Part shown: positions 1,173 through 64,000 of the stretch, in pieces
Numbering within the stretch: position 1 is the stretch's first letter
Layout of the letters: every line of letters starts with the position of its first letter
Origin: Macrostomum lignano
Lineage: Eukaryota
DNA length: 64,000 bases
Assembly (NCBI GenBank): GCA_002269645.1
Contig: NIVC01000305.1
Location: 124,001-188,000 of the forward strand
Direction: 5' to 3'
Made by a program: the position numbers and the translations under genes
The notes under the pieces: model-generated
Told to the model about the DNA's origin: nothing
The model's database searches: none
The model's input: only the letters and a program-made list of their open reading frames with translations

Positions 1173-4100
1173 TTACACAGGAACATTGGCATACTTGGCG
1201 TAGGCCTTATTATTAATCTTCTGTAGAATATAGCCCAATTGTTGACCGGGACCAACTTCGTAGACGTTCGGTTGCGGTGTATCGGAGCGTCGTCTAGTGA
1301 GAGAGGTGACAATCTGATGCCATTTCACACTGGAGTGCATCTGCTTCACCAACAGCTTCGCTATGGACTCAACTGTACGCGGCGGTTTCACAGCTACATT
1401 TGAATAAACTGGAATTCGAGGCACCCGAATAGTGCACTTGTTCAGAGCTCGGGTCAGAGTCTTGGCTGCTGGGTACATCAGATCCGTGTGGAAAGCGCCA
1501 CTCACTTCTAGCGGCTTGCAGGAGGCGATGCCAAAGTCTTTATGATGCTGTTGGATGTACTGCATTGCCTGGTGTGAACAGTGTTAATAGTATTCGGTAA
1601 GCCGATATGCCATGGCTCAACGGGGGAGCTGCTGAGATGCCATAGACTCAAGGGGAGTTGCTGAGATTCCATAGACTCAAGGGGGGTTGCTGAGATGCCA
1701 TAGACTCAGGGAGAGCTGCTTAGATGCCATAGACTCAAGGGTAGTTGCTGAGGTACCATGGCTCAATTGGGGAAGTTGCTGAGGTGCCATAGACTCAGGG
1801 AGAGCTGCTGAGAGGCCATAGACTCAAGGGTAGTTGCTAAGGTACGATGGCTCAATGGGGGAGCTGCTAAGATGCCATAGACTCAAGGGGAGCTGCTAAG
1901 ATGCCATAGACTCAAGGAGAGCTGCTGAGATGCCATAGACTCAAGGGTAGTTGCTGAGGTACCATGGCTCAATTGGTGAAGTTGCTGAGGTGCCATAGAC
2001 TCAGGGAGAGCTGCTGAGAGGCCATAGACTCAAGGGTAGTTGCTGAGGTACCATGGCTCAATTGGGGAAGTTGCTGAGGTGCCATAGACTCAAGGGGGGT
2101 TGCTGAGATGCCATAGACTCAAGGGGGGTTGCTGAGATGCCATAGACTCAAGGAGGAGTTGCTGAGAGGTCATAGGCTCAAGAGAGAGTTGCTGAGATGC
2201 CATAGGCTCAAAAGAGAGTTGCTGAGATGCCATAGACTCAAGGGTAGTTGCTGAGGTACCATGGCTCAATTGGGGAAGTTGCTGAGGTGCCATAGACTCA
2301 GGGAGAGCTGCTGAGAGGCCATAGACTCAAGGGTAGTTGCTAAGGTACGATGGCTCAATGGGGGAGCTGCTGAGATGCCATAGACTCAAGGGGAGCTGCT
2401 GAGATGCCATAGACTCAAGGGGGGTTGCTGAGATGCCATAGACTCAAGGGGGGTTGCTGAGATGCCATAGACTCAAGGGGGGTTGCTGAGATGCCATAGA
2501 CTCAAGGGGGGTTGCTGAGATGCCATAGACTCAAGGGGGGTTGCTGAGATGCCATAGACTCAAGGGGGGTTGCTGAGATGCCATAGACTCAAGGAGGAGT
2601 TGCTGAGAGGTCATAGGCTCAAGAGAGAGTTGCTGAGATGCCATAGGCTCAAAAGAGAGTTGCTGAGATGCCATAGACTCAAGGAGGAGTTGCTGAGAGG
2701 CCATAGGCTCAAGAGAGAGTTGCTGAGATGCCATAGGCTCAAAAGAGAGTTGCTGAGATGCCATAGACTCAAGGGTAGTTGCTGAGGTACCATGGCTCAA
2801 TGGGGGGAGCTGCTGAGATGCCATAGACTCAGGGAGAGCTGCTAAGAGGCCATAGACTCAAGGGTAGTTGCTGAGGTACCATGGCTCAATTGGGGAAGTT
2901 GCTGAGGTGCCATAGACCCAGGGAGAGCTGCTGAGAGGCCATAGACTCAGGGAGAGCTGCTGAGATGCCATAGACTCAGGGAGAGCTGCTGAGAGGCCAT
3001 AGACTCAATGGTAGTTGCTGAGGTACTATGGCTCAATGGGGGGAGTTGCTGAGATGCCATAGACTCAGGAAGAGTTGCTGAGAGGTCATAGGCTCAAGAG
3101 AGAGTTGCTGAGATGCCATAGGCTCAAGAGAGAGTTGCTGAGATGCCATAGACTCAGTGGGAGTTGCTGAGATGTCATAGACTCAAGGGGAGTTGCTGCG
3201 ATGGAATAGACTCAGGAAGAGTTGCTGAGATGCCATAGACTCAAGGGGGGTTGCTGAGATGCCATAGACTCAAGGGGGGTTGCTGAGATGCCATAGACTC
3301 AAGGAGGAGTTGCTGAGAGGTCATAGGCTCAAGAGAGAGTTGCTGAGATGCCATAGACTCAAGGGGAGTTGCTGCGATGGAATAGACTCAGGAAGAGTTG
3401 CTGAGATGCCATAGACTCAAGGAGGAGTTGCTGAGAGGTCATAGGCTCAAGAGAGAGTTGCTGAGATGCCATAGACTCAGGGAGAGTTGCTAAGATACCA
3501 TGGCTCAAGCGGGGCGCTGACTAAAGCCTTGAATGTCTTTGAAAATGCTGTTTTATGCTTTAAGTACCAGTATCTTTCCTTTTTCTTTCTACTGTAATTG
3601 AAATTTAACAAAAGTGATAAGTGAGCATTATACAGCTTAAGGCAATACCCATACCTCTCGATGACCAGCCAGCACAACACACCTGGCATACAGGTGGCTA
3701 GCCACATTGCACACAGGCCGAATCATGGCGTGTTTAGTCTGGCAGTGGTCTCTGGCAGCTTTCATTGCTTTGCCAATATCGGCGTCAGCTGTCAGCAGGC
3801 AGGTGGTCATGCCGCCAGGGATTTGATCGCTCACCGATTGCATGGCCTGAGCTCGGACCTGTACTAGGCGAAGGCCTGTGGGAGATGGGAGAGGCAAAGA
3901 GATGAGGATAGATTGGACTACAATACAAATAAAGATATACATGTATTACACTCCGAATAAAGACAGATTAGACTACGAATAAAGACAGATTAGACTAAGA
4001 ATAAAGACAGATTAGACTAAGAATAAAGACAGATTAGACTAAGAATAAAGACAGATTAGACTACGAATAATGGGATTAGACTACGAATAAAGACAGATTA

Positions 4101-5217
4101 GACTACGAATAATGGGATTAGACTACGAATAAAGACAGATTAGACTACGAATAATGGGATTAGACTACGAATAAAGACAGATTAGACTAAGAATAAAGAC
4201 AGATTAGACTAAGAATAAAGACAGATTAGACTAAGAATAAAGACAGATTAGACTACGAATAATGGGATTAGACTACGAATAAAGACAGATTAGACTACGA
4301 ATAATGGGATTAGACTACGAATAAAGACAGATTAGACTACGAATAATGGGATTAGACTACGAATAAAGACAGATTAGACTAAGAATAAAGACAGATTAGA
4401 CTAAGAATAAAGACAGATTAGACTAAGAATAAAGACAGATTAGACTACGAATAATGGGATTAGACTACGAATAAAGACAGATTAGACTACGAATAATGGG
4501 ATTAGACTACGAATAAAGACTAATTAGAATAAAAAGGATAAGACTATAAAAATCCTATTATTTTAGGTTAAGACTACTTTTATGCTATATAGTTACACTA
4601 CGAATGCACAACATCAAAAAGGAATCTGATGGAGAATGCAACCACAACTCACCCTCTTCAAAGGTGAAAGTACCAGCAAAAGTGTAGGCGGCAAACTCTC
4701 CCACACTGAATCCAGCGGTGCCAATGCACCTGGGCACAGCATCCGGATGGAGCTCCTCCAGAGCCAGCAAAGCAGCCATTGAGGTGACAAAAATGGCCGG
4801 CTGACTAAACTGAGTCAAGGCTAATTTACGCTCGGGCCCAGACAGGCACAGTTTGAGCAGATCGTACTTTAACACCTCGCTAGCGTGCTCAAATACCTCT
4901 TTAGTTCGGGGAAATTGCAACAGTTTGGATCCCATGCCGACGAACTGACTGGCTTGGCCAGGGAACAGAATGTAGCTGGTGTCTGCCGGGTCCACGCCTT
5001 CGGGACCGCGGTAAACGAAATCCGTGTGCGCTTCGTACTGAGGCCCGGTTGGCTTCGATTCTGCGCTACTGCTGTCGTTGCTAGGGACGCTGGTTTCAGT
5101 TGCTAAGCAACGCTTTGTCGAGTTAAATATGCCGGGAAATCGGCATGCTGCGCAAAATAACCGGCGACTTATTGCTGTCGAGGCCATTGGTAATTCTCTC
5201 AGCAATTTGAAAGTCAA
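1173..5217 (-). CDS. MCAT: Mitochondrial malonyl-CoA:ACP transacylase; exons 5217 (or ATG 5187)-4653, 3875-3655, 1568-1173
   Basis: Motifs LFPGQASQ, FSQPAIF, catalytic GFSVG, VSGAFHT, YEVGPG; phases consistent across GTGAGT and GTAT donors and CAG acceptors; N-terminus is R/S/A-rich like a presequence. Confidence 0.93.
1600..3500. repeat. ~30-bp minisatellite (gctgagatgccatagactcaaggggagtt variants) filling MCAT intron 2
   Basis: Tandem units visible; gives the spurious MASQQL/RCHRLK ORFs. Confidence 0.95.
3955..4520. repeat. 21/18-bp minisatellite (gaataaagacagattagacta / gaataatgggattagactac) in MCAT intron 1
   Basis: Tandem units with two interleaved variants. Confidence 0.95.
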
Positions 5218-5241
5218 CTAAAGTGCAAGGTCTGGCAAAAT

Positions 5242-5836
5242 CGCCCCTCAAACACCCTCTGGAATCGCCTCTCAAGCACCCTCTGGAATCCCCCTAAAAC
5301 ACCCTCTGGAATCGCCCCTCAAACACCCTCTGAAATCGCCCCTCAAACACCCTCTGGAATTGCCACTCAAACACCCTCTGGAATCGCCCCTCAAACACCC
5401 TCTGGAATCGCCCCTCAAACACCCTCTGGAATCGCCCCTCAAACACCCTCTGGAATCGCCAAACACCCTCTGGAATCGCCAAACACCCTCTGGAATCGCC
5501 AAACACCCTCTGGAATCGCCCCTCAAACACCCTCTGGAATCGCCAAACACCCTCTGGAATCGCCCCTAAAACACCCTCTAGAATCGCCCCTCAAACACCC
5601 ACTGGAATCGCCACTCAAACACCCTCTGGAATCGCCACTCAAACACCCTGGAATCGCCACTCAAACACCCTCTGGAATCGCCCCTTAAACACCCTGGAAT
5701 CGCCACTCAAACACCCTCTGGAATCGCCCCTCAAACACCCTCTGGAATCGCCCCTCAAACACCCTCTGGAATCGCCCCATAAACACCCTCTGGAATCGCC
5801 TCATAAACACCCTCTGAATCGCCACCCCCAAACACC
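5242..5836. repeat. 24-bp minisatellite (ctctggaatcgcccctcaaacacc) between POLR3K and MCAT
   Basis: Tandem units; reverse complement of the array at 6337-7462. Confidence 0.95.
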
Positions 5837-6008
5837 CTGTCTGATGTCATACGTATGTGTAGATAAAAGTTAAATCAAAGTTAAAGATTTAAGCTGAGTT
5901 AAACTTCAGACGCAAATGCCAGTTTAATATTATATTTACAACAAAAGACAATTATCAATCGACGATTCGAGCGTTCACAAAACTGCCAAAAACGAATGCA
6001 TTTAAAAA

Positions 6009-6326
6009 TCAATCTTTCCAAACGAAGGCGCACTTGGCGCATCGATACTTGGTAGTCATGGGCTCGTCAGCTGATCTAGTTTGCATCTGAACAAAGTAGC
6101 ACTGCATGTGAGAGCATTCCGGGCAGCGCTCTTCTGTGGTAGCCGCATTCTTCCAAGCATCCTCGCCGCCAAGAATATCGTCAATCTCTTTCAATTGTGG
6201 GTATTTTGTCTGCTCCATCGCGCACAGCACGTTGTAGATGTAGGGGCAGGAGCTGCAGGCGAATCTGTAGCACCGATCACCCAGCTCCAGCCGGAGCAGA
6301 TTTGAGCAGTTTGGACAAAAGTGCAA
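6009..6326 (-). CDS. POLR3K: RNA polymerase III subunit RPC10/C11; single coding exon lacking a genomic ATG
   Basis: (M)LHFCPNCSNLL...FACSSCPY...LKEIDDILGGEDAWKN...CPECSH..YFVQMQTRSADEPMTTKYRCAKC: two Zn ribbons and the TFIIS-like RSADEP motif; first codon TTG directly follows the TTTTAG acceptor (AG at 6328-6327). Confidence 0.95.
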   Translation of the reverse strand: MHFCPNCSNLLRLELGDRCYRFACSSCPYIYNVLCAMEQTKYPQLKEIDDILGGEDAWKNAATTEERCPECSHMQCYFVQMQTRSADEPMTTKYRCAKCAFVWKD

Positions 6327-6336
6327 CTAAAATGAG

Positions 6337-7462
6337 AGGTGTTTGGCGATTCCAGAGGGTGTTTGAGTGGCAATTCCAGAGGATGTTTCAAAGTCGATTC
6401 CAAGGGGTGTTTGACGGGCGATTCCAGAGGGTGTTTGAGTGGCGATTCCAGGGTGTTTGAGGGGCGATTTCAGAGGGTATTTTAGAGGCGATTCCAGAGG
6501 GTGTTTCAAAGTCGATTCCAGAAGGTGTTTGAGAGGCGATTCCAGAGGGTGTTTCAAAGTCGATTCCAGAAGGTGTTTGAGAGGCGATTCCAGAGGGTGT
6601 TTCAAAGTCGATTCCAGAGGGTGTTTCAAAGTCGATTCCAGAGGGTGTTTGAGAGGCGATTCCAGAGGGTGTTTGAGGGGCGATTCCAGAGGGTGTTTGA
6701 GGGACGATTCCAGAGGGTGTTTGAGGGGCGATTCCAGAGAGTGTTTGAGGGGCGATTCCAGAGGGTGTTTGAGGGGCGATTCCAGAGGGTGTTTGAGGGG
6801 CGATTCCAGAGGGTGTTTGAGCGGCAATTCCAGAGGGTGTTTCAAAATCGATTCCAGGGGGTGTTTGAGGGGCGATTCCAGAGGATGCTTGAGGGGCGAT
6901 TCCAGAGGGTGTTTCAAAATCGATTCCAGGGGGTGTTTGAGGGGCGATTCCAGAGGATGCTTGAGGGGCGATTCCAGAGGGTGTTTGAGGGACGATTCCA
7001 GAGAGTGTTTGAGGGGCGATTCCAGAGAGTGTTTGAGGGGCGATTCCAGAGGGTGTTTGAGGGGCGATTCCAGAGGGTGTTTGAGGGGCGATTCCAGAGG
7101 GTGTTTGAGCGGCAATTCCAGAGGGTGTTTCAAAATCGATTCCAGGGGGTGTTTGAGGGGCGATTCCAGAGGATGCTTGAGGGGCGATTCCAGAGGGTGT
7201 TTCAAAATCGATTCCAGGGGGTGTTTGAGGGGCGATTCCAGAGGGTGTTTGAGGGGCGATTCCAGAGGGTGTTTGAGGGGCGATTCCAGAGGGTGTTTGA
7301 GGGGCGATTCCAGAGGGTGTTTGAGGGGCGATTCCAGAAGGTGTTTGAGGGGCGATTCCAGAGAGGGTGTTTGAGGGGCGATTCCAGAGGGTGTTGGAGA
7401 GGAGATTCCGGAGGGTTTGAGGGGCGATACCAGGGGGTGTTTGAGTCGTGATACCAGGGGTT
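6337..7462. repeat. 24-bp minisatellite (gaggggcgattccagagggtgttt) between MED30 and POLR3K, inverted relative to 5242-5836
   Basis: Tandem units, with ttcaaa(g/a)tcgattcc variant blocks forming higher-order repeats. Confidence 0.95.
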
Positions 7463-7708
7463 GTTATTCAGCTGACAGGTTTGCGCAGTTACGCATTAAA
7501 TAATTGACAAAATCGTATATAATTTGTACAAACTTTGTAAGTTGTTTGAACCGAATATATTTTTAAAGAAGGAACTAAGAAGTTGACACCAATAAAGATG
7601 AACGATAGTGACAAAAATTAATTGTGAACTGAATTTTGTGACATTGATAATTATACACAAAAATGCTTTTACAATTTTGTAACCGAAACATTTATGAACC
7701 TTTTTTTC

Positions 7709-7960
7709 CCGATGAAAACGGTACCTAAGGCTAAGAAGTGTCTCAGAGCCACTTGCGTTGTACCAGCGTAGTTGCAGGTACATTGGTAGAGTAGGAAGGA
7801 TTCGCGGTACAAGTCGCCAAAAAAGTCGTCAGAGTCTCTTTAGAGTCAATTTGAGGCGTTCTATTGTCTGCGACTCCGGGGCCACAAAGTCGGGCCACTC
7901 AACTGTTGCATTACAGTCCTTTGAGTCGTTAAAAAGTGACAAAAGCCGCTAGTGAGTTTT
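7709..7960 (+). mobile_element. Fragment of a dispersed DNA-transposon-like repeat (left end)
   Basis: cccgatgaaaacggta...ttgcgt...gttgcag matches 16580-16660, and ggtacaagtcgccaaaaa(a)gtcgtca matches 17896-17920. Confidence 0.5.
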
Positions 7961-8047
7961 TAGCGATTCTGGTCACGATAACGTTTTCAACGGGTTAGTG
8001 TTTGAACAACAAACTAAGACAATAAATTATAACAGATCAATCCAGAT

Positions 8048-8545
8048 TTAGCTAGTAGGCAGTTCACTTAGCATTACCGACAGCTGGTGAATGAGTTGAG
8101 AATTGCCGGATGCTAAACGTTTTATAACAGCATTCAACTGGTTGACCTGCTCAATCAGCTGTTTCGCTTCGCCGGTTTTTGCAGCGGAAGCGGCTTCAAT
8201 AGATTCTGCTGCCTGCTCGTCTGCACTGTCACCTTCTAGAGGCAGCAATCTGATGGGATCAGGCTGGGCCACTTGCTTACTAGCCGCTGCAACTCTGGTG
8301 TACACAACTCGAAGTCGCTTTAGTTTTTGCTCCAACGAGTTAACCAGATCGGTGAGAGTTTGCCGCTGCTGATGAAGCGGAGCCTGAGACTGTTGAGAAC
8401 CGCCAGTGAGACTGCTCTGGGTCGGTCGATAGAATGAGCAAATATCTGACACGGATTGAAGTATTTCAAACACCAGATCGCTGCCTTCTTGACAGAGTGC
8501 GCCCGATTCAATCAGGTTCAGTGGAGCCGGCTGGTCTGTTGCCAT
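8048..8545 (-). CDS. MED30: Mediator subunit 30-like, single exon
   Basis: LCQEGSDLVFEILQSVSDI, KLKRLRVVYTRV, DPIRLLP and QLIHQLSVML resemble MED30 blocks (recognised from memory); ATG 8545 in GCCATGG context, 5 nt after a CCTTAG acceptor. Confidence 0.72.
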   Translation of the reverse strand: MATDQPAPLNLIESGALCQEGSDLVFEILQSVSDICSFYRPTQSSLTGGSQQSQAPLHQQRQTLTDLVNSLEQKLKRLRVVYTRVAAASKQVAQPDPIRLLPLEGDSADEQAAESIEAASAAKTGEAKQLIEQVNQLNAVIKRLASGNSQLIHQLSVMLSELPTS

Positions 8546-8759: not shown

Positions 8760-8999
8760 TCAATTACCCCAGCTAATGCTGGCACCCATTTTACAGCTGG
8801 GTGAACTGAAGCCATGCAGAGCTACGTGTCTTGCTCAAGGATACAAACTGTTACAGTGGGATCGGGAATCAAACCCCCGACCTTTAAGTCGTGAGTCCAA
8901 CGCTCTAACCACTAGGCTACAACCCCCTTTGTTCCAATGGGATCGGGAATCGAACCCCCGACCTTTAAGTCGTGAGTCCGACGCTCTAACCACTGGGCT
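8760..8999 (-). mobile_element. tRNA-derived CORE-type (MIR-like) SINE with a duplicated tRNA head
   Basis: Minus strand reads tagcctagtggttagagcg (A box)...gggggtt(t/c)gattcccg (B box) twice (8856-8920, 8938-8999); plus strand cattttacagctgggtgaactg...gtgtcttgctcaagg resembles the antisense CORE domain; anticodon stem does not pair, so not a tRNA gene. Confidence 0.7.
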
Positions 9000-29286: not shown

Positions 29287-29439
29287 ACTTCAAGTAGGTC
29301 AGGAAATATACAGACTAAAATAGCATATTGGCACTGGGATTGCTAGCATTTTAGTCAGATCGACTCGCTCTGCAAATCAATAAGCTCTGAGAACCCCTTA
29401 CTGTTAAACCAGCACAATCTGCTCTAGAATCTACCAAAT

Positions 29440-30362
29440 TTACTTTAAATCTACCCACACTACTCTAGAATCTACTCAATCTACTCTAGAATCTACCCAC
29501 TCTACTCTAGAATCTACCCACTCTACTCTAGAATCTACCCACTCTACTCTAGAATCTACCCACTCTACTCTAGAATCTACTCACTCTACGTACTCTAGAA
29601 TCTACCCAATCTACTCTAGAATCTACCCACTGAACTCTAGAATCTACCCACTTTACTCTAGAATCTACCCACTCTACTCTAGAATCTACCCACTCTACTC
29701 TAGAATCTACCCACTCTACTCTAGAATCTACCCACTCTACTCTAGAATCTACCCACTCTACTCTAGAATCTACCCACTCTACTCTAGAACCTACCCACTC
29801 TACTCTAGAATCTACCCAATCTACTCTAGAATCTACCCACTCTACTCTAGAACCTACCCACTCTACTCTAGAATCTACCCACTCTACTCTAGAATCTACC
29901 CACTGCACTCTAGAATCTACCCACTCTACTCTAGAATCTACCCAATCTACTCTAGAATCTACCCACTCTACTCTAGAATCTACCCACTCTACTCTAGAAC
30001 CTACCCACTCTACTCTAGAATCTACCCACTCTACTCTAGAATCTACCCACTGCACTCTAGAATCTACCCACTCTACTCTAGAATCTACCCAATCTACTCT
30101 AGAATCTACCCACTCTACTCTAGAATCTACCCACTCTACTCTAGAACCTACCCACTCTACTCTAGAATCTACCCACTCTACTCTAGAATCTACCCAATCT
30201 ACTCTAGAATCTACCCACTCTACTCTAGAATCTACCCACTCTACTCTAGAATCTACCCACTCTACTCTAGAATCTACCCACTCTACTCTAGAACCTACCC
30301 ACTCTACTCTAGAATCTACCCACTCTACTCTAGAATCTACCCACTGCACTCTAGAATCTACG
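29440..30362. repeat. 21-bp minisatellite (ctctagaatctacccactcta) between LZIC and RWDD4
   Basis: Highly homogeneous tandem units; gives the spurious WVDSRVE ORF. Confidence 0.95.
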
Positions 30363-30449
30363 CACATCGATTTAAGCACAAACCAATCCACTCAAAAAGC
30401 AGTCTGAACCATCCATCAAGCAACAGATCAGTTTACAGAAATAAGCCAG

Positions 30450-32671: not shown

Positions 32672-33400
32672 CTGTGTCTATCTACCTGTCTGTGTGTCTA
32701 TCTACCTGTCTGTGTGTCTATCTACCTGTCTGTGTGTCTATCTACCTGTCTGTGTGTCTATCTACCTGTCTGTGTGTCTATCTATCTGTCTGCGTGTCTA
32801 ATTACCTGTCTGTGTGTCTATCTACCTGTCTGTGTGTCTATCTACCTGTCTGTGTGTCTATCTACCTGTCTGTGTGTCTATCTATCTGTCTGCGTGTCTA
32901 TCTACCTGTCTGTGTGTCTATCTACCTGTCTGTGTGTCTATCTATCTGTCTGCGTGTCTATCTACCTGTCTGTGTGTCTATCTACCTGTCTGTGTGTCTA
33001 TCTACCTGTCTGTGTGTCTATCTACCTGTCTGTGTGTCTATCTATCTGTCTGCGTGTCTATCTACCTGTCTGTGTGTCTATCTACCTGTCTGTGTGTCTA
33101 TCTATCTGTCTGCGTGTCTATCTACCTGTCTGTGTGTCTATCTACCTGTCTGTGTGTCTATCTATCTGTCTGCGTGTCTATCTACCTGTCTGCGTGTCTA
33201 TCTACCTGTCTGTGTGTCTATCTACCTGTCTGTGTGTCTATCTACCTGTCTGTGTCTATCTACCTGTCTGTGTGTCTATCTACCTGTCTGTGTGTCTATC
33301 TACCTGTCTGCGTGTCTATCTACCTGTCTGTGTGTCTATCTACCTGTCTGTGTGTCTATCTACCTGTCTGTGTGTCTATCTACCTGTCTGTGCGTTAATC
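32672..33400. repeat. 20-bp compound repeat (tctacctgtctgtgtgtcta) between AIG1 and LZIC
   Basis: Tandem units; gives the spurious CLSTCL ORFs. Confidence 0.95.
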
Positions 33401-33709
33401 TACCTTTCTGTGTTTATGTACCTGTTTGTGTTTATCTACCTGTCTGTCTGTTTATCTTCATGTTTTTGTTCCTCTACCTTTTTGTGTTTACGTACCTGTT
33501 TATGTGTGTAAGTGCATAATGGAGAATAACAGAGTACCTTAAGGTGTCTGAGGATGCGCAGAAAAACATTTTTTGTTATTAATTGTTTTGAAACTACTAA
33601 AAGGATACAATTTTATTGATTTCAATGCTTGTAGTTGCAGTTGTTATAGTATATAGTTATAGAACAGAGAAGCCAAACACCCGATCTTATTATATTTTTG
33701 AATCGCAAG

Positions 33710-48903: not shown

Positions 48904-51900
48904 TCAGTAGGCTCGCATCGAAGCCTGATAGATACCGGCAATATCGTCGCGGGTCTGCGGACAGGGCGCAATGCTGCGCAGTCGCTGCTGCGGCAGGACA
49001 CCCTCGACAAGCGAGTCGATGTGCGAAGCGTCAAAGCCCAGTGCCTGAAGGCCGTCGGGCACGTCAAGATCGTGCATAAGCTGGCGCACCTGGTCGGAGA
49101 GAACCTGAATGAATACGAAGGAAAAATGATTAGAAAACTCAAAAAGTGCACATGAATAGAACAAAAATACCTATCCATACCATAAATTATATTGAATTTT
49201 TTTGATACACCACTAATATTAGAAATATAAAAAATACGCTAAGAAATTAATCAATTAAATTGAGGCTACAAATTATAACGAGCTTTTATTTAAAACTCTA
49301 CTAAAAGTAGAAATACAAGAAAAATAGGCTAAGAAAATAGTCAAAAAATTTAGGCTTCATAGTATACCGAATTTTTATTTGATACTCTACTAACAGTAGA
49401 AATATAAGAAAATACGCTAAAAAATTATTAAATCTTGTTGAAAGCTGTACTGTTTATCTTCTAAGATTCTAAACTAATATTTTATAGCCACTAAACAACA
49501 CCCACCTTCCCAGCATCCTCCCGTTTCTTCCAGGTCACATCGGCGCCCAGCAGTCGGGCAGCCTCCAAGTGCCGGTCAGGCGAAGCGGCACCGGTGAACT
49601 CGAACACCTTCGGCGCGGTGATCACCACTGACAGTCCGTGCGGAATCAGGGCGTGCTGATCGGAATAGCCTTCGGACCTGTAGCCGCCGCTGCTTACAGA
49701 CGTCCCCAACCCGGAGATGGGGTAGGACAGGCCGTGGCACAGGTGCACCCCAGCATTGCCGAAGCCAACGCCAGCCATGCAGGCGGCCAGGTGCATGGCC
49801 GACCGAGCCTCCGAGTCGCTCGGGTTGCGTACGGCCCGACGAAAATAGCGGGCCGACGCGTCCAGGGCCCAGCGGCACCAGACATCGCTGATTGGATTGG
49901 AGCCCTGTGGCATGGGATGTGATTGACAGGTTGGAGACCCCTGTGTCAGACAGGTTGGAGACCCCTGTGTCAGACAGGTTGGAGACCCCAGTGTCTGACA
50001 GGTTGGAGACCCCAGTGTCAGACAGGTTGGAGACCCCAGTGTCAGACAGGTTGGAGACCCCAGTGTCTGACAAGTGAGAGACCCCAGTGTCAGACAGGTT
50101 GGAGACCCCAGTGTCTGACAAGTGAGAGACCCCAGTGTCCGACAGGTTGGAGACCCCAGTGTCCGACAGGTTGGAGACCCCAGTGTCTGACAAGTGAGAG
50201 ACCCCAGTGTCCGACAGGTTGGAGACCCCAGTGTCCGACAGGTTGGAGACCCCAGTGTCTGACAGGTTGGAGACCCCAGTGTCTGACAGGTTGGAGACCC
50301 CAGTGTCAGACAGGTTGGAGACCCCAGTGTCTGACAAGTGAGAGACCCCAGTGTCTGACAGGTTGGAGACCCCTGTGTCTGACAGGTTGGAGAGCCAGTG
50401 TCTGAAAGGTTGGAGACCCCAGTGTCTGACAGGTTGGAGAGCCAGTGTCTGAAAGGTTGGAGACCCCAGTGCAGACAGGTTGGAGACCCCAGTGTCTTAC
50501 AAGTGAGAGACCCCAGTGTCTGACAGGTTGGAGACCCCTGTGTCTGACAGGTTGGAGAGCCAGTGTCTGAAAGGTTGGAGACCCCAGTGTCTGACAGGTT
50601 GGAGAGCCAGTGTCTGAAAGGTTGGAGACCCCAGTGTCTGACAGGTTGGAGACCCCAGTGTCTAACAGTTAACTACTCCGTGTCTAACAGGTAACTAATC
50701 CGTGTCTAACAGGTAACTAATCCAAGGCCAAACCTGATAAGCCGGCCTCAGCTTGGGATCAATGGGTCGCGGCGTTCTCTGATCGAACGGCAGTGCAGTG
50801 AAAGACTCCAACGCGTGACAGACAACATCGAAGCCGCTGTAGGCAGACACGCGGTTGGGCATGCTGGCTGTGTGATCGGGATCGATCAGGCCCAGAGTGG
50901 GTCTGAGGGCTCTATTGGCGATCCCAGTCTTTGCGTGCATAGATTCCAGGTCGAAAACGGCTACCCCGGTTGTCTCGCTACCGGTGCCCGAGGTGGTTGG
51001 CACCGCAATTAACGGCTTAAGTTCGTGAGTGACAGGCAGGCCGCGACCAATGGGAGCGTTCACGTAGTCTAAGAAGTCGGCTTTGGGGTTGGTGACGTAG
51101 AGATTGGCAGCTTTGGCCGTGTCGATCACGCTGCCGCCGCCTACGGCAATGAAAGCGTCGTAGTTAGCGGCTCCGGCAGCCTTGATTGCCGCTTTGAACG
51201 AGGAGTCCGTGGGTTCGACTCTGACGTCTGGATAGACGTCGAATGGGACTGAGTTGGATGCGAGACTGTCGGCTACCTGAGATGCGTGGAGTGTTGGTTT
51301 GGAGCTGGTAATGTCTAACAGCAGTGTATGATCCGTGTCTAACAGTGTATGATCCGTGTCTAACAGTGTATGATCCGTGTCTAACAGTGTATGATCCGTG
51401 TCTAACAGCAGTGTATGATCCGTGTCTAACAGTGTATGATCCGTGTCTAACAGCAGTGTATGATCCGTGTCTAACAGTGTATGATCCGTGTCTAACAGCA
51501 GTGTATGATCCGTGTCTAACAGTGTATGATCCGTGTCTAACAGCAGTGTATGATCCGTGTCTAACAGCAGTGTATGATCCGTGTCTAACAGTGTATGATC
51601 CGTGTCTAACAGTGTATGATCCGTGTCTAACAGCAGTGTATGATCCGTGTCTAACAGTGTATGATCCGTGTCTAACAGTGTATGATCCGTGTCTAACAGT
51701 GTATGATCCGTGTCTAACAGCAGTGTATGATCCGTGTCTAACAGTGTATGATCCGTGTCTAACAGCAGTGTATGATCCGTGTCTAACAGCAGTGTATGAT
51801 TCGTGTCTAACAGCAGTGTATGATCCGTGTCTAACAGCAGTGTATGATCCGTGTCTAACAGCAATGTATGATCCGTGTCTAACAGTGTATGATCCGTGTC

Positions 51901-53798
51901 TAACAGCAGTGTATGATCCGTGTCTAACAGCAGTGTATGATCCGTGTCTAACAGCAGTGTATGATCCGTGTCTAACAGTGTATGATCCGTGTCTAACAGC
52001 AGTGTATGATCCGTGTCTAACAGTGTATGATCCGTGTCTAACAGCAGTGTATGATCCGTGTCTAACAGCAGTGTATGATCCGTGTCTAACAGTGTATGAT
52101 CCGTGTCTAACAGCAGTGTATGATCCGTGTCTAACAGTGTATGATCCGTGTCTAACAGCAGTGTATGATCCGTGTCTAACAGCAGTGTATGATCCGTGTC
52201 TAACAGTGTATGATCCGTGTCTAACAGCAGTGTATGATCCGTGTCTAACAGTGTATGATCCGTGTCTAACAGCAGTGTATGATCCGTGTCTAACAGCAGT
52301 GTATGATCCGTGTCTAACAGCAGTGTATGATCCGTGTCTAACAGCAGTGTATGATCCGTGTCTAACAGCAGTGTATTATCCGTGTCTAACAGCAGTGTAT
52401 GATCCGTGTCTAACAGCAGTGTATGATCCGTGTCTAACAGCAGTGTATGATCCGTGTCTAACAGCAGTGTATGATCCGTGTCTAACAGTGTTTGATCCGT
52501 GTCTAACAGTGTTTGATCCGTGTCTAACAGTGTTTGATCCGTGTCTAACAGTGTATGATCCTTGTCTAACAGCAGTGTATGATTCGTGTCTAACAGCAGT
52601 GTATGATCCGTGTCTAACAGTGTATGATCCGTGTCTAACAGTGTATGATCCGTGTCTAACAGTGTATGATCCGTGTCTAACAGTGTATGATCCGTGTCTA
52701 ACAGCAATGTATGATCCGTGTCTAACAGTGTATGATCCGTGTCTAACAGCAGTGTATGATCCGTGTCTAACAGCAGTGTATGATCCGTGTCTAACAGCAG
52801 TGTATGATCCGTGTCTAACAGCAGTGTATGATCCGTGTCTAACAGCAGTGTATGATCCGTGTCTAACAGCAGTGTATGATCCGTGTCTAACAGCAGTGTA
52901 TGATCCGTGTCTAACAGCAGTGTATGATCCGTGTCTAACAGCAGTGTATGATCCGTGTCTAACAGCAGTGTATGATCCGTGTCTAACAGCAGTGTATGAT
53001 CCGTGTCTAACAGCAGTGTATGATCCGTGTCTAACAGCAGTGTATGATCCGTGTCTAACAGTGTATGATCCGTGTCTAACAGCAGTGTATGATCCGTGTC
53101 TAACAGCAGTGTATGATCCGTGTCTAACAGCAGTGTATGATCCGTGTCTAACAGTGTATGATCCGTGTCTAACAGCAGTGTATGATCCGTGTCTAACAGT
53201 GTATGATCCGTGTCTAACAGCAGTGTATGATCCGTGTCTAACAGTGTATGATCCGTGTCTAACAGTGTATGATCAGTGTCTAACAGCAGTGTATGATCCG
53301 TGTCTAACAGTGTATGATCAGTGTCTAACAGCAGTGTATGATCCGTGTCTAACAGCAGTGTATGATCCGTGTCTAACAGCAGTGTATGATCCGTGTCTAA
53401 CAGCAGTGTATATGTCTAACAGCGGTATGTGATCTCTCTAACCGGGTCTACCTAATTCATGATCCGTGTCCGTTCAAATTTAAATTTAACCCTTGCCTAA
53501 CCTTTTTAAACGGCGGCAACTCAGCCAGGTTGTTGTCGGTAAATACAAGAACTCGCTTAGCGCCCAGATTGACAACATCCTGCCCGATTTCTCGGGTCAC
53601 TCCGGGGCCGTAGCGCACGGTAGATACGGCCATCTCAAAGGCGTACTCAGTCTCTTGCACAGTCTGATGGCAGCGCCTCAGCACCCCGCCGTGATGGCGA
53701 TGGCCGCAGGCGCTATGAGCGGGACAAGCGTTGCCAGCGCCACGTTCGAGCACCTCTCGCATAGCGGTCAGCACGCGAGAGCGCAATTGTTGTGTCAT
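48904..53798 (-). CDS. ADHFE1: Mitochondrial hydroxyacid-oxoacid transhydrogenase (Fe-ADH family, ~479 aa); exons 53798-53502, 51276-50734, 49904-49506, 49104-48904
   Basis: [80 protein letters not shown]; all introns are phase-0 GT-AG. Confidence 0.95.
49920..50720. repeat. 24-bp minisatellite (gacaggttggagaccccagtgtct) in ADHFE1 intron 2
   Basis: Tandem units. Confidence 0.95.
51313..53430. repeat. 21/24-bp minisatellite (tgtatgatccgtgtctaacag +/- cag) in ADHFE1 intron 1
   Basis: ~2.1 kb, very homogeneous, two length variants. Confidence 0.97.
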
Positions 53799-56194: not shown

Positions 56195-57595
56195 TTTTGC
56201 GGATTTCCCGAAGCTAAAATTGGGGGATTCCCTAAGTTAGAATTGAGGGATTTTCCGAAGCTAAAATTGGGGGATTCCCGAAGCTAAAATTGGGGCATTC
56301 TCGAAGCTAAAATTTGGGCATTCTCGAAGCTAAAATTGGGGGATTTTCCGAAACTAAAATGGGGGATTTCCTGTAGCTAAAATTGGGGGATTCCCGAAGT
56401 TAAAATTGAGGGATTTTCAGAAGCTAAAATTGGGGGATTCCCGAAGCTAAAATTGGGGAATTTCCCAAAACTAAAATGGGGGATTTCCTGTAGCTAAAAT
56501 TGGGGCATTCTCGAAGCTAAAATTTGGGCATTCTCGAAGCTAAAATTGGGGGATTTTCCGAAACTAAAATGGGGGATTTCCTGTAGCTAAAATTGGGGCA
56601 TTCTCGAAGCTAAAATTTGGGCATTCTCGAAGCTAAAATTGGGGGATTTTCCGAAACTAAAATGGGGGATTTCCTGTAGCTAAAATTGGGGGATTCCCTA
56701 AGTTAAAATTGAGGGATTTTCAGAAGCTAAAATTGGGGGATTCCCGAAGCTAAAATTGGGGAATTTCCCAAAACTAAAATGGGGGATTTCCTGTAGCTAA
56801 AATTGGGGGGATTCTTGAAGTTAAAATTGAGGGATTTTCCGAAGCTGAAATTGGGGGATTTTCCGAAACTAAAATGGGGGATTTCCTGTAGCTAAAATTG
56901 GGGGATTCCCGAAGCTAAAATTTGGGCATTCTCGAAGCTAAAATTGGGGGATTTTCCGAAACTAAAATGGGGGATTTCCTGTAGCTAAAATTGGGGGATT
57001 CCCTAAGTTAAAATTGAGGGATTTTCAGAAGCTAAAATTGGGGGATTCCCGAAGCTAAAATTGGGGAATTTCCCAAAACTAAAATGGGGGATTTCCTGTA
57101 GCTAAAATTGGGGGGATTCTTGAAGTTAAAATTGAGGGATTTTCCGAAGCTGAAATTGGGGGATTTTCCGAAACTAAAATGGGGGATTTCCTGTAGCTAA
57201 AATTGGGGGATTCCCGAAGCTAAAATTTGGGCATTCTCGAAGCTAAAATTGGGGGATTTTCCGAAACTAAAATGGGGGATTTCCTGTAGCTAAAATTGGG
57301 GGATTCCCTAAGTTAAAATTGAGGGATTTTCAGAAGCTAAAATTGGGGGATTCCCGAAGCTAAAATTGGGGAATTTCCCAAAACTAAAATGGGGGATTTC
57401 CTGTAGCTAAAATTGGGGGGATTCTTGAAGTTAAAATTGAGGGATTTTCCGAAGCTGAAATTGGAGGATTTCCGAAACTAAAATTGGAGGATTCCCGAAA
57501 CTAAAATTAGGGGATTTCCGAAGCTAAAGAGGAATTTCCCGAAGCTAAAACTGGGGGATTTCTCGAAGCTAAACTTGGGGGTTTCCCAGTGAAAT
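56195..57595. repeat. ~21-23-bp minisatellite (gaagctaaaattgggggattcc variants) with higher-order structure, between the CoA-transferase and ADHFE1
   Basis: Tandem units with recurring multi-unit blocks. Confidence 0.95.
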
Positions 57596-60800: not shown

Positions 60801-62307
60801 TAAGTCCGATGTTGCTCAGCTGCCTGCGTTTCCCAGCCTCCACCATCCGCTCGATAAGGTGAGCGGGGGTGGCCGCGCCGCCGTGAATGAAAATCTTCTG
60901 ATTGGAGTCGAGTAGCTTATCGAATACCTTTGAAATTCCAATATTATATCGCAGATTTAATAAATACTGAAAGCGATATGATTTTAAGCTTAGCACTGGT
61001 TAGAAGATCAGACAGACAGATACTCTTTAGAAAACGGGGCAGAGACACTATAAGACGCATCAAGAAGACAGGCACACAAAGACACATTGAAAGAAGCTGA
61101 GACACTCAATTCTCGAGAAAAAAAGGCAAAAACAGACACTGAGACAGGCAATAGGAGACACTGAGACATGCTATAAGAGACACTGAGACAGGCTATAAGA
61201 GACACTGAGACAGGCTATAAGAGACACTGAGACAGGCTATAAGAGACACTGAGACAGGTTCTATAAGAGACACTGAGACAGGTTCTATAAGAGACACTGA
61301 GACAGGCAATAAGAGACACTGAGACAGGCTCTATAAAAGACACTGAGACAGGCTATAAGAGACACTGAGACAGGCTATAAGAGACACTGAGACAGGCAAT
61401 AAGAGACACTGAGACAGGCTATAAGAGACACTGAGACAGGCAATAAGAGACACTGAGACAGGCAATAAGAGACACTGAGACAGGCTCTATAAAAGACACT
61501 AAGACAGGCTATAAGAGACACTGAGACAGGCTATAAGAGACACTGAGACAGGCAATAAGAGACACTGAGACAGGCTATAAGAGACACTGAGACAGGCAAT
61601 AAGAGACACTGAGACAGGCAATAAGAGACACTGAGACAGGCTATAAGAGACACTGAGACAGGCAATAAGAGACACTGAGACAGGCTATAAGAGACACTGA
61701 GACAGGCAATAAGAGACACTGAGACAGGCTATAAGAGACACTGAGACAGGCTCTATAAGAGACACTGAGACAGGCTATAAGAGACACTGAGACAGGCTAT
61801 AAGAGACACTGAGACAGGCTATAAGAGACACTGAGACAGGCTATAAGAGACACTGAGACAGGCAATGAGACACTGAGAGAGACACTAAGACAGACACTGA
61901 GACAGGCAATGAGACACTGAGACAGGCAATGAGACAGACACTGAGACAGGCAATGAGACAGACACTGAGACACTGAGACAGGCAATGAGACACTGAGACA
62001 GACACTAATACAGACACTGAGACAGACAGACATGATGAAGAAAGCCCACGAGACACATCAAGACAGAAACGCTATGATAGACACTATCACACATTTACAA
62101 TGAGTCACATACCTGATCAGCATTCAGCCACACGGGGTATTTATTAGGAATAGGGTGGAACGGCTCCTGTTGAGTGTGCAAAGTGGATGCGTAGGTGTGC
62201 GACCACCTGCTCAACCTGTGAGCGAACCCTCTGCATCGATTGGTGAGCAGCGGCAGCGAAGATGCGGCACAATTAGATACTACTTTGAGTAGGAGGCGGC
62301 TTGTCAT
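57810..62307 (-). CDS. Family I CoA-transferase, acetate:succinate CoA-transferase / 4-hydroxybutyrate CoA-transferase / acetyl-CoA hydrolase-like, mitochondrial (~490 aa); exons 62307-62113, 60927-60505, 60022-59594, 58890-58653, 57997-57810
   Basis: IFIHGGAATP, IHIHTEG, DFTPIFLSEIP, LQTGIGSIPDAVL, GVHTEMFSDG (catalytic Glu motif), IEIDLTGQVVSDSIG...SGVGGQMDFIRGA, VVTEYGIAQLWGK...IAHPDHRE; phases 0, 0, 0, 1 are consistent; presequence-like N-terminus. Confidence 0.9.
58045..58600. repeat. GGGATCT/GGAGATT satellite in CoA-transferase intron 4
   Basis: gggatctgggagatt tandem. Confidence 0.88.
59000..59575. repeat. 23-bp minisatellite (ttcaggaacccttcatcccactc) in CoA-transferase intron 3
   Basis: Tandem units. 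Confidence 0.93.
60060..60450. repeat. Degenerate ccctaattac-type repeat in CoA-transferase intron 2
   Basis: Recurrent ctaatt/ctaat motifs at ~20-bp spacing. Confidence 0.7.
61135..62030. repeat. 21-bp minisatellite (gagacactgagacaggc(t/a)ataa) in CoA-transferase intron 1
   Basis: Tandem units. Confidence 0.95.
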
Positions 62308-62446: not shown

Positions 62447-63582
62447 TCTGAATGTTCAGGATAGAAAGAAATGACTCACCCTGAATGTTCAGGACAGTAA
62501 GAAATGACTCACCCTGAATATTCAGGACAGTTAGAAATGACTCATCCTGAATGTTCAGGACAGTTAGAAATGACTCATCCTGAATGTTCAGGACAGTAAG
62601 AAATGACTCATCCTGAATGTTCAGGACAGTTAGAAATGACTCATCCTGAATGTTCAGGACAGTTAGAAATGACTCATCCTGAATGTTCAGGACAGTTAGA
62701 AATGACTCATTCTGAATGTTCAGGACAGTTAGAAATGACTCACCCTGAATGTTCAGGACAGTAAGAAATGACTCATCCTGAATGTTCAGGACAGAAAGAA
62801 ATGACTCACCTGAATGTTCAGGACAGTAAGAAATGACTCACCCTGAATGTTCAGGACAGTAAGAAATGACTCACCCTGAATATTCAGGACAGTTAGAAAT
62901 GACTCACCCTGAATGTTCAGGACAGTTAGAAATGACTCATCCTGAATGTTCAGGACAGTTAGAAATGACTCATTCTGAATGTTCAGGACAGTTAGAAATG
63001 ACTCATCCTGAATGTTCAGGACAGTTAGAAATGACTCATCCTGAATGTTCAGGACAGTAAGAAATGACTCATCCTGAATGTTCAGGACAGAAAGAAATGA
63101 CTCACCTGAATGTTCAGGACAGTAAGAAATGACTCACCCTGAATGTTCAGGACAGTAAGAAATGACTCATCCTGAATATTCAGGACAGTTAGAAATGACT
63201 CACCCTGAATGTTCAGGACAGTTAGAAATGACTCATCCTGAATGTTCAGGACAGTAAAAAATTACTCATTCTGAATGTTCAGGACAGTTAGAAATGACTC
63301 ATCCTGAATGTTCAGGACAGTTAGAAATGACTCATCCTGAATGTTCAGGACAGTAAGAAATGACTCACCCGAATGTTCAGGACAGTTAGAAATGACTCAT
63401 CCTGAATGTTCAGGACAGTTAGAAATGACTCATCCTGAATGTTCAGGACAGTAAGAAATGACTCACCCGAATGTTCAGGACAGTAAGAAATGACTCACCC
63501 GAATGTTCAGGACAGTAAAAAATTACTCATTCTGAATGTTCAGGACAGTAAAAAATTACTCATTCTGAATGTTCAGGACAGT
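62447..63582. repeat. 33-bp minisatellite (ctgaatgttcaggacagttagaaatgactcatc) immediately upstream of the CoA-transferase gene
   Basis: ~34 tandem units, most containing TGACTCA and a cctgaa(tg/ta)ttcagg near-palindrome. Confidence 0.95.
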
Positions 63583-64000
63583 ATACAGACCAACTAAAAA
63601 ACAAAAGTTGGGCACACTAAACTTACAGGGAGACGAGACTGACTATAAGGCTTGTTGCAAGAGATTAATCAAATGCCCAAGAAAAAATGTGATTAGATAG
63701 AAAGGGCTCAATGTTTCCCTAATTGCACGATACCCTAATAAAGCTCAGAGGATGAATAGAAAGGAATCTCTAGCTTTCCTAATTAAATGGAGAGAAAACA
63801 ACGCTCCATCTAGCCTCGGGATGGAGAACTCAAACTGCTCATTTCCCATACGAACCTATCAGCAAGAGCTGTACTCAGACTACTGTACAAAGGCCTGAAA
63901 AGTACTCTCCCCAGACATAGTAGATTCTCTACCCGGCAAAGAATGGACAAAATCACGAGGCAGAGGCGTGATTGCGTTGAGTTAGGAGAAGTCGCCACAG

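What the first reader, a model, noticed from the sequence alone, without database searches (positions are those of the whole stretch)
6009..6340. POLR3K has no genomic start codon; a spliced-leader AUG probably supplies it
Seen: the RPC10 frame starts TTG CAC TTT TGT CCA (L-H-F-C-P) directly after a TTTTAG acceptor. I found no ATG-GT micro-exon between here and the MED30 stop; most of that spacer is minisatellite. Known: RPC10 homologues begin M-L-x-F-C-P, and flatworm spliced leaders end in AUG that can serve as initiator. Inference: SL-AUG + TTG gives M-L-H-F-C-P, so translation of an essential Pol III subunit would depend on trans-splicing.
Basis: partly seen in the sequence, partly recalled or inferred. 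Interest (0 to 1): 0.8.

Follow-up and report, generated by a model that had tools for sequence, protein, structure and literature searches.

The report
Start codon supplied by spliced leader
This copy of the flatworm Macrostomum lignano's RNA polymerase III subunit RPC10 gene has a splice acceptor where its ATG should be, so the start codon most likely comes from the trans-spliced leader RNA, a mechanism already known in flatworms; a sister copy in the same genome still has a genomic ATG.

Summary
On the minus strand, 6326..6009 is an intronless RPC10/POLR3K reading frame. It begins at TTG (Leu2 of the conserved M-x-x-F-C-P N-terminus) and is directly preceded by cctctcattttAG; that TAG is also an in-frame stop. 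The organism is Macrostomum lignano, whose 35-nt spliced leader ends in ATG.

Between the MED30 stop and this acceptor there is no ATG|GT and no GTRAG donor. The last 561 nt contain no AG, and the 24-bp minisatellite array contains no ATG.

The main new result comes from two other copies in the M. lignano assembly. One (L001) has the same TAG|TTG. The other (L002) has ATG|TTG at exactly that position. All seven coding differences among the three copies are synonymous, so the ATG-less copies remain under constraint.

Best explanation (about 0.78): leader trans-splicing at 6327/6326 creates AUG-UUG-CAC, giving MLHFCP. I could not reach any cDNA or read evidence.

The mechanism has been known since 2006 in schistosomes and tapeworms, so this is a new member of a known kind. 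The claim that Pol III depends on trans-splicing is overstated, because an ATG-bearing copy exists.

The parts
6009..6326 (-). RPC10/POLR3K coding exon: 105 sense codons starting at TTG (Leu2), stop TGA at 6011-6009, no intron and no initiator ATG
   Evidence: Human RPC10 matches at E=4e-40; Pfam PF02150 and PF01096 match; residue 1 aligns to residue 2 of homologues.
6327..6329 (-). TAG. Its AG (6328-6327) is the proposed trans-splice acceptor, and as a codon it is an in-frame stop that closes the frame upstream.
   Evidence: The same TAG is present in L001. It is replaced by ATG in L002.
6330..6340 (-). Polypyrimidine tract acctctcatttt (10 of the 11 bases before the AG are pyrimidines)
6345..7445 (-). 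24-bp minisatellite (46 copies; minus-strand unit CCTCTGGAATCGCCCCTCAAACAC), the proposed outron or intercistronic spacer. It has no ATG and only 3 AG on the minus strand; the last 561 nt before the acceptor are AG-free.
7446..8047 (-). Unique spacer / MED30 3' region. It holds 5 ATGs, none followed by GT, and no GTRAG donor. It includes an insertion of about 147 nt (roughly 7745-7892) that is specific to this copy and carries the only long upstream ATG reading frame (ATG at 7783).
8048..8545 (-). MED30 coding sequence, the upstream same-strand neighbour and candidate first gene of a polycistron. A candidate acceptor ccttAG has its G at 8551.
   Evidence: PF11315 on the L001 and L002 orthologues.
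5923..5928 (-). ATTAAA, the likely POLR3K poly(A) signal, 81 nt after the stop and upstream of the second minisatellite array
5239..5838 (+). Second array of the same 24-bp minisatellite, inverted relative to 6345-7445. It lies between the POLR3K 3' end and the MCAT acceptor.
4653..5217 (-). First coding exon of the downstream same-strand MCAT gene (malonyl-CoA:ACP acyltransferase, PF00698), preceded by cactttAG (G at 5218). A leader ATG would be in frame with it, 10 codons upstream of the genomic ATG at 5187.

Best explanation
The window carries one of at least three copies of the Macrostomum lignano RPC10 (POLR3K) gene. In this copy the triplet that should be the initiator ATG is TAG.

Proposed mechanism:
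- The gene is transcribed as a precursor whose 5' part is an ATG-free, nearly AG-free, pyrimidine-rich minisatellite. Transcription is probably together with the upstream MED30 gene.
- The spliceosome uses the first good acceptor after that stretch (cctctcattttAG, G at 6327).
- No cis donor lies upstream, so the acceptor is joined in trans to the 35-nt spliced leader CGGTCTCTTACTGCGAAGACTCAATTTATTGCATG.
- The mature mRNA then reads ...UUGCAUG|UUGCACUUUUGUCCA. The leader's terminal AUG becomes codon 1 and translation gives MLHFCPNC..., the canonical RPC10 N-terminus with its first zinc ribbon.

Shown: the gene's identity, the missing ATG, the acceptor, the absence of any upstream ATG exon or consensus donor, the ATG/TAG difference between copies, and the purely synonymous divergence.

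Taken from the literature: the leader sequence, its terminal ATG, and its use as an initiator in other flatworms.

Inferred: that this acceptor is trans-spliced, and that the leader AUG is the codon used.
For: 1. The protein is a full-length RPC10 lacking only Met1.
2. The organism is M. lignano (the identical protein is found on GCA_002269645.1 contigs). Its single spliced leader ends in ATG, and 30-39% of its genes are trans-spliced, with conserved genes enriched (PMC8629364; PMC5730564). PMC10468722 states that the Macrostomum leader's final ATG is a likely translation start.
3. TAG preceded by 10 of 11 pyrimidines sits exactly at the codon-2 boundary. Such sites occupy 0.27% of window positions.
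4. The spacer has no ATG|GT and no GTRAG donor in any of the three copies. The only long upstream ATG reading frame lies in an insertion absent from L001 and L002. The 561 nt before the acceptor contain no AG, and the array contains no ATG.
5. L002 has ATG|TTG where the window and L001 have TAG|TTG. This shows that TTG is Leu2 and that the protein starts exactly one codon upstream.
6. All 7 coding differences among the copies are third-position synonymous changes. Four of them are transitions separating the two ATG-less copies. One third of possible transitions in this sequence are synonymous, so P is about 0.012 for those four. Given 2.2% divergence in the flanking non-coding DNA, about 5 non-synonymous changes would be expected and none is seen. 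Neighbouring MED30 does show amino-acid differences between copies.
7. MED30, POLR3K and MCAT lie on the same strand. The MED30-POLR3K distance minus repeats is about 620 nt, under the published 1-kb operon criterion (PMC8629364).
Against: - There is no direct evidence. No cDNA, leader-containing read or peptide for this gene could be found.
- The acceptor is TAG, not the CAG of the most enriched M. lignano trans-acceptor motif [T/C]TNCAG. That motif is present at only 9551 of 21754 sites, so this is a weak objection.
- The copies are young (2-3.5% divergence), so the selection test rests on few substitutions.
- With an ATG-bearing copy in the genome, the ATG-less copies are not strictly needed.
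- The spacer including repeats is long (1.7 kb).
- No canonical AATAAA or ATTAAA was found for MED30 in the spacer, so the layout of the transcription unit is uncertain.
Confidence: 0.78

Rival explanations
1. Start-codon loss in a redundant copy. The window copy (and L001) lost the ATG and is not translated into RPC10; the ATG-bearing copy of L002 type supplies the protein. The acceptor-like TAG is a coincidence.
For: M. lignano is a hidden polyploid with many duplicated genes (PMC10468722). L002 encodes the identical protein with a genomic ATG. The copies are only 2-3.5% diverged, so a recently dead copy could still look intact.
Against: Two separate copies keep the TAG form with an intact 105-codon frame and 4 of 4 synonymous differences between them. 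About 5 non-synonymous changes would be expected at the flanking non-coding rate. The replacement triplet, together with 10 of 11 upstream pyrimidines, forms a good acceptor exactly in phase; the chance of that is about 0.3%. The L002 contig is the one that looks degraded, with a 1-nt frameshift in the neighbouring MCAT.
Confidence: 0.08
2. Initiation without a leader. Translation would start either at the UUG itself (near-cognate start) or at the first genomic AUG (Met37), giving a 69-residue protein with only the C-terminal TFIIS-like ribbon.
For: TTG is a possible near-cognate initiator. No out-of-frame ATG precedes Met37 in the exon, and the array upstream has no ATG, so a scanning ribosome on an unspliced 5' end would reach Met37.
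Against: L002 shows TTG is read as Leu2 after an ATG. UUG is a weak initiator and here has T at position -3 (general knowledge of start-site context). Three of the seven synonymous-only differences lie in codons 5-23, upstream of Met37, and all four N-terminal zinc-ribbon cysteines are kept, so the N-terminal part is under coding constraint.
Confidence: 0.06
3. A cis-spliced upstream exon supplies the ATG, giving a conventional two-exon gene with an intron through the minisatellite.
For: The acceptor at 6327 could serve cis splicing just as well. ATGs at 7783, 7691 and 7644 have in-phase GT dinucleotides downstream.
Against: There is no ATG|GT. None of the in-phase GTs matches the M. lignano donor consensus GT[G/A]AG, and no GTRAG occurs anywhere in the spacer of any copy (consensus from PMC8629364). 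ATG 7783 lies in an insertion absent from L001, which shares the TAG acceptor. Any such exon would add an unconserved N-terminal extension, whereas L002 and 15 of 17 homologues start directly at M-x-x-F-C-P. L002 has no AG at that position, so the copies would need different gene structures.
Confidence: 0.04
4. Sequence or assembly error: the true sequence is ATG and the TAG is an artefact.
For: Mlig_3_7 is a long-read assembly, and the 1-nt homopolymer deletion in the L002 MCAT may be such an error.
Against: The TAG form is present in two different sequences, the window and NIVC01000730.1, which differ from each other at other sites. The TAG/ATG difference is three adjacent substitutions, not the indel typical of long-read errors.
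Confidence: 0.01

Closest known systems
Flatworm mRNAs that use the spliced leader's 3'-terminal AUG as initiator methionine (Cheng, Cohen, Ndegwa and Davis 2006, J Biol Chem 281:733; Schistosoma mansoni and S. japonicum; Echinococcus granulosus in PMC3510090)
   Same: The leader ends in AUG. The acceptor lies directly in front of codon 2 of a conserved protein. The genome encodes no initiator that would give the conserved N-terminus. PMC9851317 reports more than 40 S. mansoni cDNAs that need the leader AUG. PMC3510090 reports cDNAs in which the leader AUG is required to match orthologous N-termini.
   Different: The species is a free-living macrostomorph rather than a parasite (Neodermata). 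I found no published gene-level example for M. lignano or for POLR3K. The evidence here is genomic only, without the cDNA and translation assays of the 2006 work. In addition, the same genome holds both states of the gene, genomic ATG and leader-dependent.
slORFs: reading frames created by leader addition in nematodes, ascidians and euglenozoans (slORFfinder, PMC9851317)
   Same: The start codon is contributed by the trans-spliced leader rather than by the gene.
   Different: Those cases mostly use NUG or internal leader codons and often create new or alternative frames. Here the leader AUG would restore the canonical frame of a universally conserved protein.
Downstream genes of M. lignano / C. 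elegans-type operons resolved by leader trans-splicing (PMC8629364)
   Same: Three genes lie on the same strand. The repeat-adjusted intergenic distance is under 1 kb. An acceptor without a cis donor sits at the 5' end of the downstream gene. Repeats inflate the spacer, as that paper describes.
   Different: Co-transcription of MED30, POLR3K and MCAT is not shown. The raw spacer is 1.7 kb, against a typical mode of about 100 bp.
RPC10 (POLR3K in human, C11/Rpc11 in yeast), the TFIIS-like RNA-cleavage subunit of RNA polymerase III (PDB 7fji_I, 7a6h_I, 5fj8_I)
   Same: The alignment runs end to end (E=4e-40 to human). Both zinc ribbons and the RSADEP acidic-loop region are conserved.
   Different: The gene is intronless and lacks its own initiator codon at this locus. 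It has KYRC instead of the usual FYKC/FFKC, and a shorter C-terminal ribbon loop that it shares with the marine relative L003.

Membership tests
Gene initiated from the spliced leader AUG (flatworm type) | The organism has a spliced leader whose exon ends in AUG | tested here: met
   Organism identified as M. lignano through an identical protein on GCA_002269645.1. Leader sequence ...TTATTGCATG taken from PMC8629364. No leader RNA gene lies in the window itself.
Gene initiated from the spliced leader AUG (flatworm type) | A 3' splice acceptor directly upstream of the conserved frame, in phase 0 with it | tested here: met
   cctctcattttAG|TTG CAC TTT TGT, with TTG as Leu2.
Gene initiated from the spliced leader AUG (flatworm type) | No genomic AUG able to give the conserved N-terminus | tested here: met
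   An in-frame TAG lies immediately upstream, and the first in-frame ATG is codon 37.
Gene initiated from the spliced leader AUG (flatworm type) | No cis donor or upstream ATG exon that could pair with the acceptor | tested here: met
   No ATG|GT and no GTRAG in the spacer in any of three copies; candidate ATG 7783 is not conserved. The search was limited to the MED30-POLR3K spacer.
Gene initiated from the spliced leader AUG (flatworm type) | Leader sequence found joined to the exon in cDNA or RNA-seq | not testable with these tools
   No M. lignano transcript-derived proteins or contigs are in the collections. The paper supplements that are held do not list the gene.
Gene initiated from the spliced leader AUG (flatworm type) | Translation actually starts at the leader AUG | not testable with these tools
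   This needs N-terminal proteomics, ribosome profiling or a reporter assay.
RPC10 / POLR3K (RNA polymerase III subunit) | N-terminal RPB9-type zinc ribbon followed by a C-terminal TFIIS-type zinc ribbon in a protein of about 108 residues | tested here: met
   PF02150 scores 27.0 bits (cut-off 25.2) over residues 1-31. PF01096 scores 61.6 bits over residues 67-104.
RPC10 / POLR3K (RNA polymerase III subunit) | Closer to RPC10 than to the paralogues RPB9, RPA12 and TFIIS | tested here: met
   Human RPC10 scores E=4e-40 and yeast RPC10 1e-24, against 1e-9 for RPA12 and 2e-8 for RPB9.
RPC10 / POLR3K (RNA polymerase III subunit) | Invariant cysteines and the Q.RSADEP motif of the catalytic hairpin | tested here: met
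   C4, C7, C24, C27, C68, C71, C96, C99 and Q82, R84-P89 are invariant in an 18-sequence alignment.
Operon (polycistron resolved by trans-splicing) in M. lignano | Adjacent same-strand genes with a repeat-adjusted distance under 1 kb (criterion of PMC8629364) | tested here: met
   MED30 stop at 8048 to acceptor at 6327 is 1721 nt. Subtracting the 1101-nt minisatellite leaves about 620 nt.
Operon (polycistron resolved by trans-splicing) in M. lignano | The downstream gene is demonstrably trans-spliced and co-transcribed with the upstream gene | not testable with these tools
   No transcript data could be reached.

The most novel reading that the evidence does not exclude
Within one polyploid genome, sister copies of an essential, universally conserved gene exist in both states. 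One has a genomic ATG (L002). Two have that very triplet replaced by a trans-splice acceptor, so the leader AUG takes over (window, L001). If all are expressed, this catches the hand-over of a start codon from gene to spliced leader (or back) in progress. It would suggest that gene redundancy after genome duplication lets genes become dependent on trans-splicing. The AG-free, ATG-free minisatellite outron may be what makes the acceptor choice unambiguous.
Probability: 0.4. Interest if true: 0.5.

Novelty: new member of a known kind. Interest (0 to 1): 0.33.

Why it matters
Practically, genes of this type are mis-annotated as 5'-truncated or missed. The public gene call for this protein starts at residue 11 of the window's reading frame (P0001). 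Macrostomum annotation pipelines therefore need to add the leader ATG at trans-splice sites.

Biologically, this would extend leader-AUG initiation from parasitic flatworms to an early-branching free-living flatworm, and to a core transcription subunit. The ATG/TAG pair of sister copies offers a simple natural experiment on how dependence on trans-splicing arises.

It does not open a new mechanism. Initiation from the leader AUG has been established since 2006.

Tried and rejected
1. Direct transcript evidence. Exact look-ups of MLHFCPN..., LHFCPN..., MHFCPN... and the Met37-start protein were all absent from the 15-billion-protein collection. The same held for six MED30 variants. The collection evidently holds no M. 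lignano transcriptome assemblies.
2. Supplementary tables. Wudarski 2017 and Grudniewska 2016 contain no POLR3K or MED30 entry. Ustyantsev 2021 has no supplements held.
3. Other flatworm RPC10 genes. I wanted to test whether leader-AUG use is conserved for this gene. A profile search returned 1797 hits, but none of the 120 listed hits that carry a source name is from a flatworm, so I did not pursue this.
4. The closest relative found is L003, from a marine sample (Logan ERR14224704 and a TARA scaffold), 63% identical. It has a genomic ATG 5 nt after a ttttcag acceptor. This shows a genomic ATG in a relative but does not settle which state is ancestral within M. lignano.
5. Retrocopy idea: that the L002 ATG is a relic of a retro-copied leader. 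The 14 nt ending in ATG match the leader's 3' end at 9 of 14 positions by eye (L002 sequence, leader sequence). That is not distinguishable from chance in T-rich sequence, so I rejected it as unsupported.
6. Shared acceptor word YTTAG|TTG. It occurs at MED30, POLR3K and MCAT, with 10 hits in the window, all on the minus strand, against about 6 expected. The other seven sites show no convincing downstream genes, so I treat it as a curiosity, not evidence.
7. A window-wide screen of stop-to-stop reading frames for further genes without an ATG was uninformative because of the many minisatellites.

Full report
**What is at the coordinates.**
On the minus strand the sequence reads ...ggaatcgccaaacacctctcattttag|TTG CAC TTT TGT CCA AAC TGC.... 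TTG occupies 6326-6324. The preceding triplet TAG (6329-6327) is in frame, so the frame cannot continue upstream. The frame then runs 105 codons without an intron to TGA at 6011-6009.

The product is a complete RPC10/POLR3K. Pfam finds the N-terminal RPB9-type and the C-terminal TFIIS-type zinc ribbons. Human RPC10 structures match at E=4e-40, far better than RPA12 or RPB9. Residue 1 of the window protein aligns with residue 2 of the yeast chain, and residue 2 aligns with residue 3 of the human chain. In an 18-sequence alignment, 15 of 17 homologues begin M-x-x-F-C-P, and the window protein begins exactly one residue after that Met. The first in-frame ATG is codon 37, downstream of the whole first zinc ribbon.

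**Organism and leader.**
The database gene call for this protein is P0001, which is truncated to start at residue 11 of the window's reading frame. It lies on two contigs of GCA_002269645.1, which the papers read here call the Mlig_3_7 assembly of Macrostomum lignano. That paper trail gives the single 35-nt spliced leader CGGTCTCTTACTGCGAAGACTCAATTTATTGCATG. It also reports that 30-39% of genes are trans-spliced, with conserved genes enriched (PMC8629364; PMC5730564). [quoted passage not shown] No leader RNA gene lies in the window.

**Upstream region.**
From the MED30 stop (8048) to the acceptor is 1721 nt. Of this, 1101 nt (6345-7445) is a 24-bp minisatellite.
- On the minus strand the spacer has only five ATGs, at 7911, 7783, 7691, 7644 and 7496. 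None is followed by GT.
- No match to the species' donor consensus GT[G/A]AG occurs anywhere in the spacer, in this copy or in the two others.
- The array contains no ATG and only three AG. The last 561 nt before the acceptor are AG-free.
- The acceptor has 10 of 11 pyrimidines before the AG. A YAG with at least 9 of 11 pyrimidines occurs at 0.27% of positions in the window.

An acceptor with no cis donor upstream is the stated requirement for leader trans-splicing (Conrad et al. 1993, as cited in PMC8629364).

**Three copies, two states.**
Aligning the window with the two assembly loci shows that L001 (NIVC01000730.1) has the same cattttAG|TTGCAC. L002 (NIVC01004936.1) has cattcATG|TTGCAC, a genomic ATG exactly where the leader AUG would land. 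All three copies encode the identical 105 residues from TTG onward.
- The seven nucleotide differences in the coding sequence are all third-position and synonymous.
- Four of them are transitions separating the two ATG-less copies. One third of possible transitions are synonymous, so P is about 0.012 for these four.
- The other three are transversions specific to L002.
- Flanking unique non-coding DNA differs by 2.2-3.5%. At that rate about five non-synonymous changes would be expected between the window and L001 if these copies were drifting, and none is seen (my inference).
- MED30 next door does show amino-acid differences between copies.
- The only upstream ATG with a long reading frame and in-phase GTs (7783) lies in a 147-nt insertion found only in the window copy. 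It cannot explain L001.

**Mechanism.**
The best explanation is that the precursor is trans-spliced at 6327/6326. The precursor is probably a MED30-POLR3K(-MCAT) polycistron, because the repeat-adjusted spacing of about 620 nt meets the published under-1-kb operon criterion. The mature mRNA then begins ...UUAUUGCAUG|UUGCACUUU, and the leader AUG starts translation of MLHFCPNC.... An ATTAAA at 5928-5923 probably ends the mRNA before the second minisatellite array. The trans-splicing event and the use of the leader AUG are inferences.

**Rivals.**
- *Dead redundant copy.* The synonymous-only divergence, the quality and exact phase of the acceptor, and the fact that L002 is the contig with a frameshifted neighbouring gene all argue against it.
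- *Initiation at UUG or at Met37.* L002 reads TTG as Leu2. Coding constraint covers codons 5-23, and the four N-terminal cysteines are kept.
- *A cis exon supplying the ATG.* There is no consensus donor and no conserved upstream ATG reading frame, and the N-terminus is fixed at M-x-x-F-C-P.
- *Assembly error.* The TAG form is seen in two distinct sequences, and the difference from ATG is three substitutions.

**Comparison with what is known.**
The flatworm leader's 3'-terminal AUG as initiator methionine was demonstrated by Cheng et al. (2006). I could not read that paper itself. Later papers summarise it as more than 40 S. mansoni cDNAs that need the leader AUG (PMC9851317) and 35 S. japonicum genes with conserved use in Echinococcus (PMC3510090). 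It is treated as a general flatworm feature (PMC7653826; PMC12582326).

The present case fits every genomic criterion of that class. The two criteria that need RNA or protein data could not be tested. I found no paper linking POLR3K to spliced leaders and no gene-level description for M. lignano. This is therefore a new member of a known kind. The one feature I have not seen described is the coexistence, within one genome, of ATG-bearing and leader-dependent copies of the same gene.

The mechanism is well supported but unproven. The statement that an essential Pol III subunit depends on trans-splicing is too strong, given the ATG-bearing copy.

**What could not be done.**
No M. lignano transcript data are reachable with these tools. 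The ancestral state, ATG or TAG, cannot be polarised. The closest relative found (L003, 63% identical, unknown marine organism) has a genomic ATG 5 nt after a ttttcag acceptor. However, the M. cliftonense and M. hystrix loci were not available.

Noticed in passing
window 5239-5838 and 6345-7445; also L001 2142-2942 / 3528-4480 and L002 2449-2937 / 3517-3963: POLR3K is bracketed by two arrays of the same 24-bp minisatellite in inverted orientation, with arms up to 170 nt at 96% complementarity. The layout is shared by all three copies. In a polycistronic precursor the arrays could pair into a long double-stranded stem that loops out the POLR3K mRNA. The consequence is unknown.
   Followed up: partly
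window 5218 (acceptor G), 5217-5185, minus strand; L001 about 4530-4564; L002 about 3993-4036: The downstream MCAT gene has cactttAG|TTGAC..., 30 nt before its genomic ATG (5187). A leader ATG joined there would be in frame, giving MLTFKLLRELP-MAST..., a possible longer mitochondrial presequence. The acceptor and the open frame are kept in all three copies. L001 has an extra in-frame ATG in this stretch.
   Followed up: partly
window 8551 (acceptor G), 8550-8543, minus strand: MED30 has ccttAG|TTGCC ATG GCA. A leader ATG joined here would be out of frame and open an 11-codon upstream reading frame overlapping the MED30 start. The AG is absent in L001 (ccttaattgcc).
   Followed up: partly
L002 about 4385-4400 (window equivalent about 4836-4850, minus strand): The L002 copy of MCAT has a 1-nt deletion in a C run (GGGCCCGAG to GGGCCGAG) that leads to a stop a few codons later. 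This is either a long-read homopolymer error or decay of that copy. No MCAT gene was called on L002.
   Followed up: partly
window about 7745-7892, minus strand: A 147-nt insertion in the MED30-POLR3K spacer is present only in the window copy, not in L001 or L002. It carries the ATG at 7783.
   Followed up: yes
window 8857-8926, minus strand: There is a weak Rfam tRNA match (31.8 bits, gathering score 29), and ARAGORN finds no tRNA. A similar-looking sequence lies upstream of MED30 in L002 (not tested there). It is probably a tRNA-derived repeat element.
   Followed up: no
whole window: The word YTTAGTTG occurs 10 times, all on the minus strand (about 6 expected over both strands). Three of the hits are the candidate acceptors of MED30, POLR3K and MCAT. 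The other seven have no obvious gene downstream.
   Followed up: partly
whole window (for example 1607-3509, 3945-4528, 29418-30365, 32673-33457, 49924-50668, 51312-53411, 56201-57587, 61134-61972, 62448-63583): The window holds at least 15 separate minisatellite arrays with 14-33-bp periods, each hundreds to 2100 bp long. Some may lie in MCAT introns (gene structure beyond exon 1 was not checked). They create many long spurious reading frames.
   Followed up: no
L003 139-465 (Logan ERR14224704) and L004 (TARA metagenome scaffold): An unidentified AT-rich marine organism carries the closest RPC10 relative (63% identity). It shares the unusual CYFVQMQ...KYRC features and is intronless, with a genomic ATG 5 nt after a ttttcag acceptor. 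It may be another macrostomorph or flatworm.
   Followed up: partly
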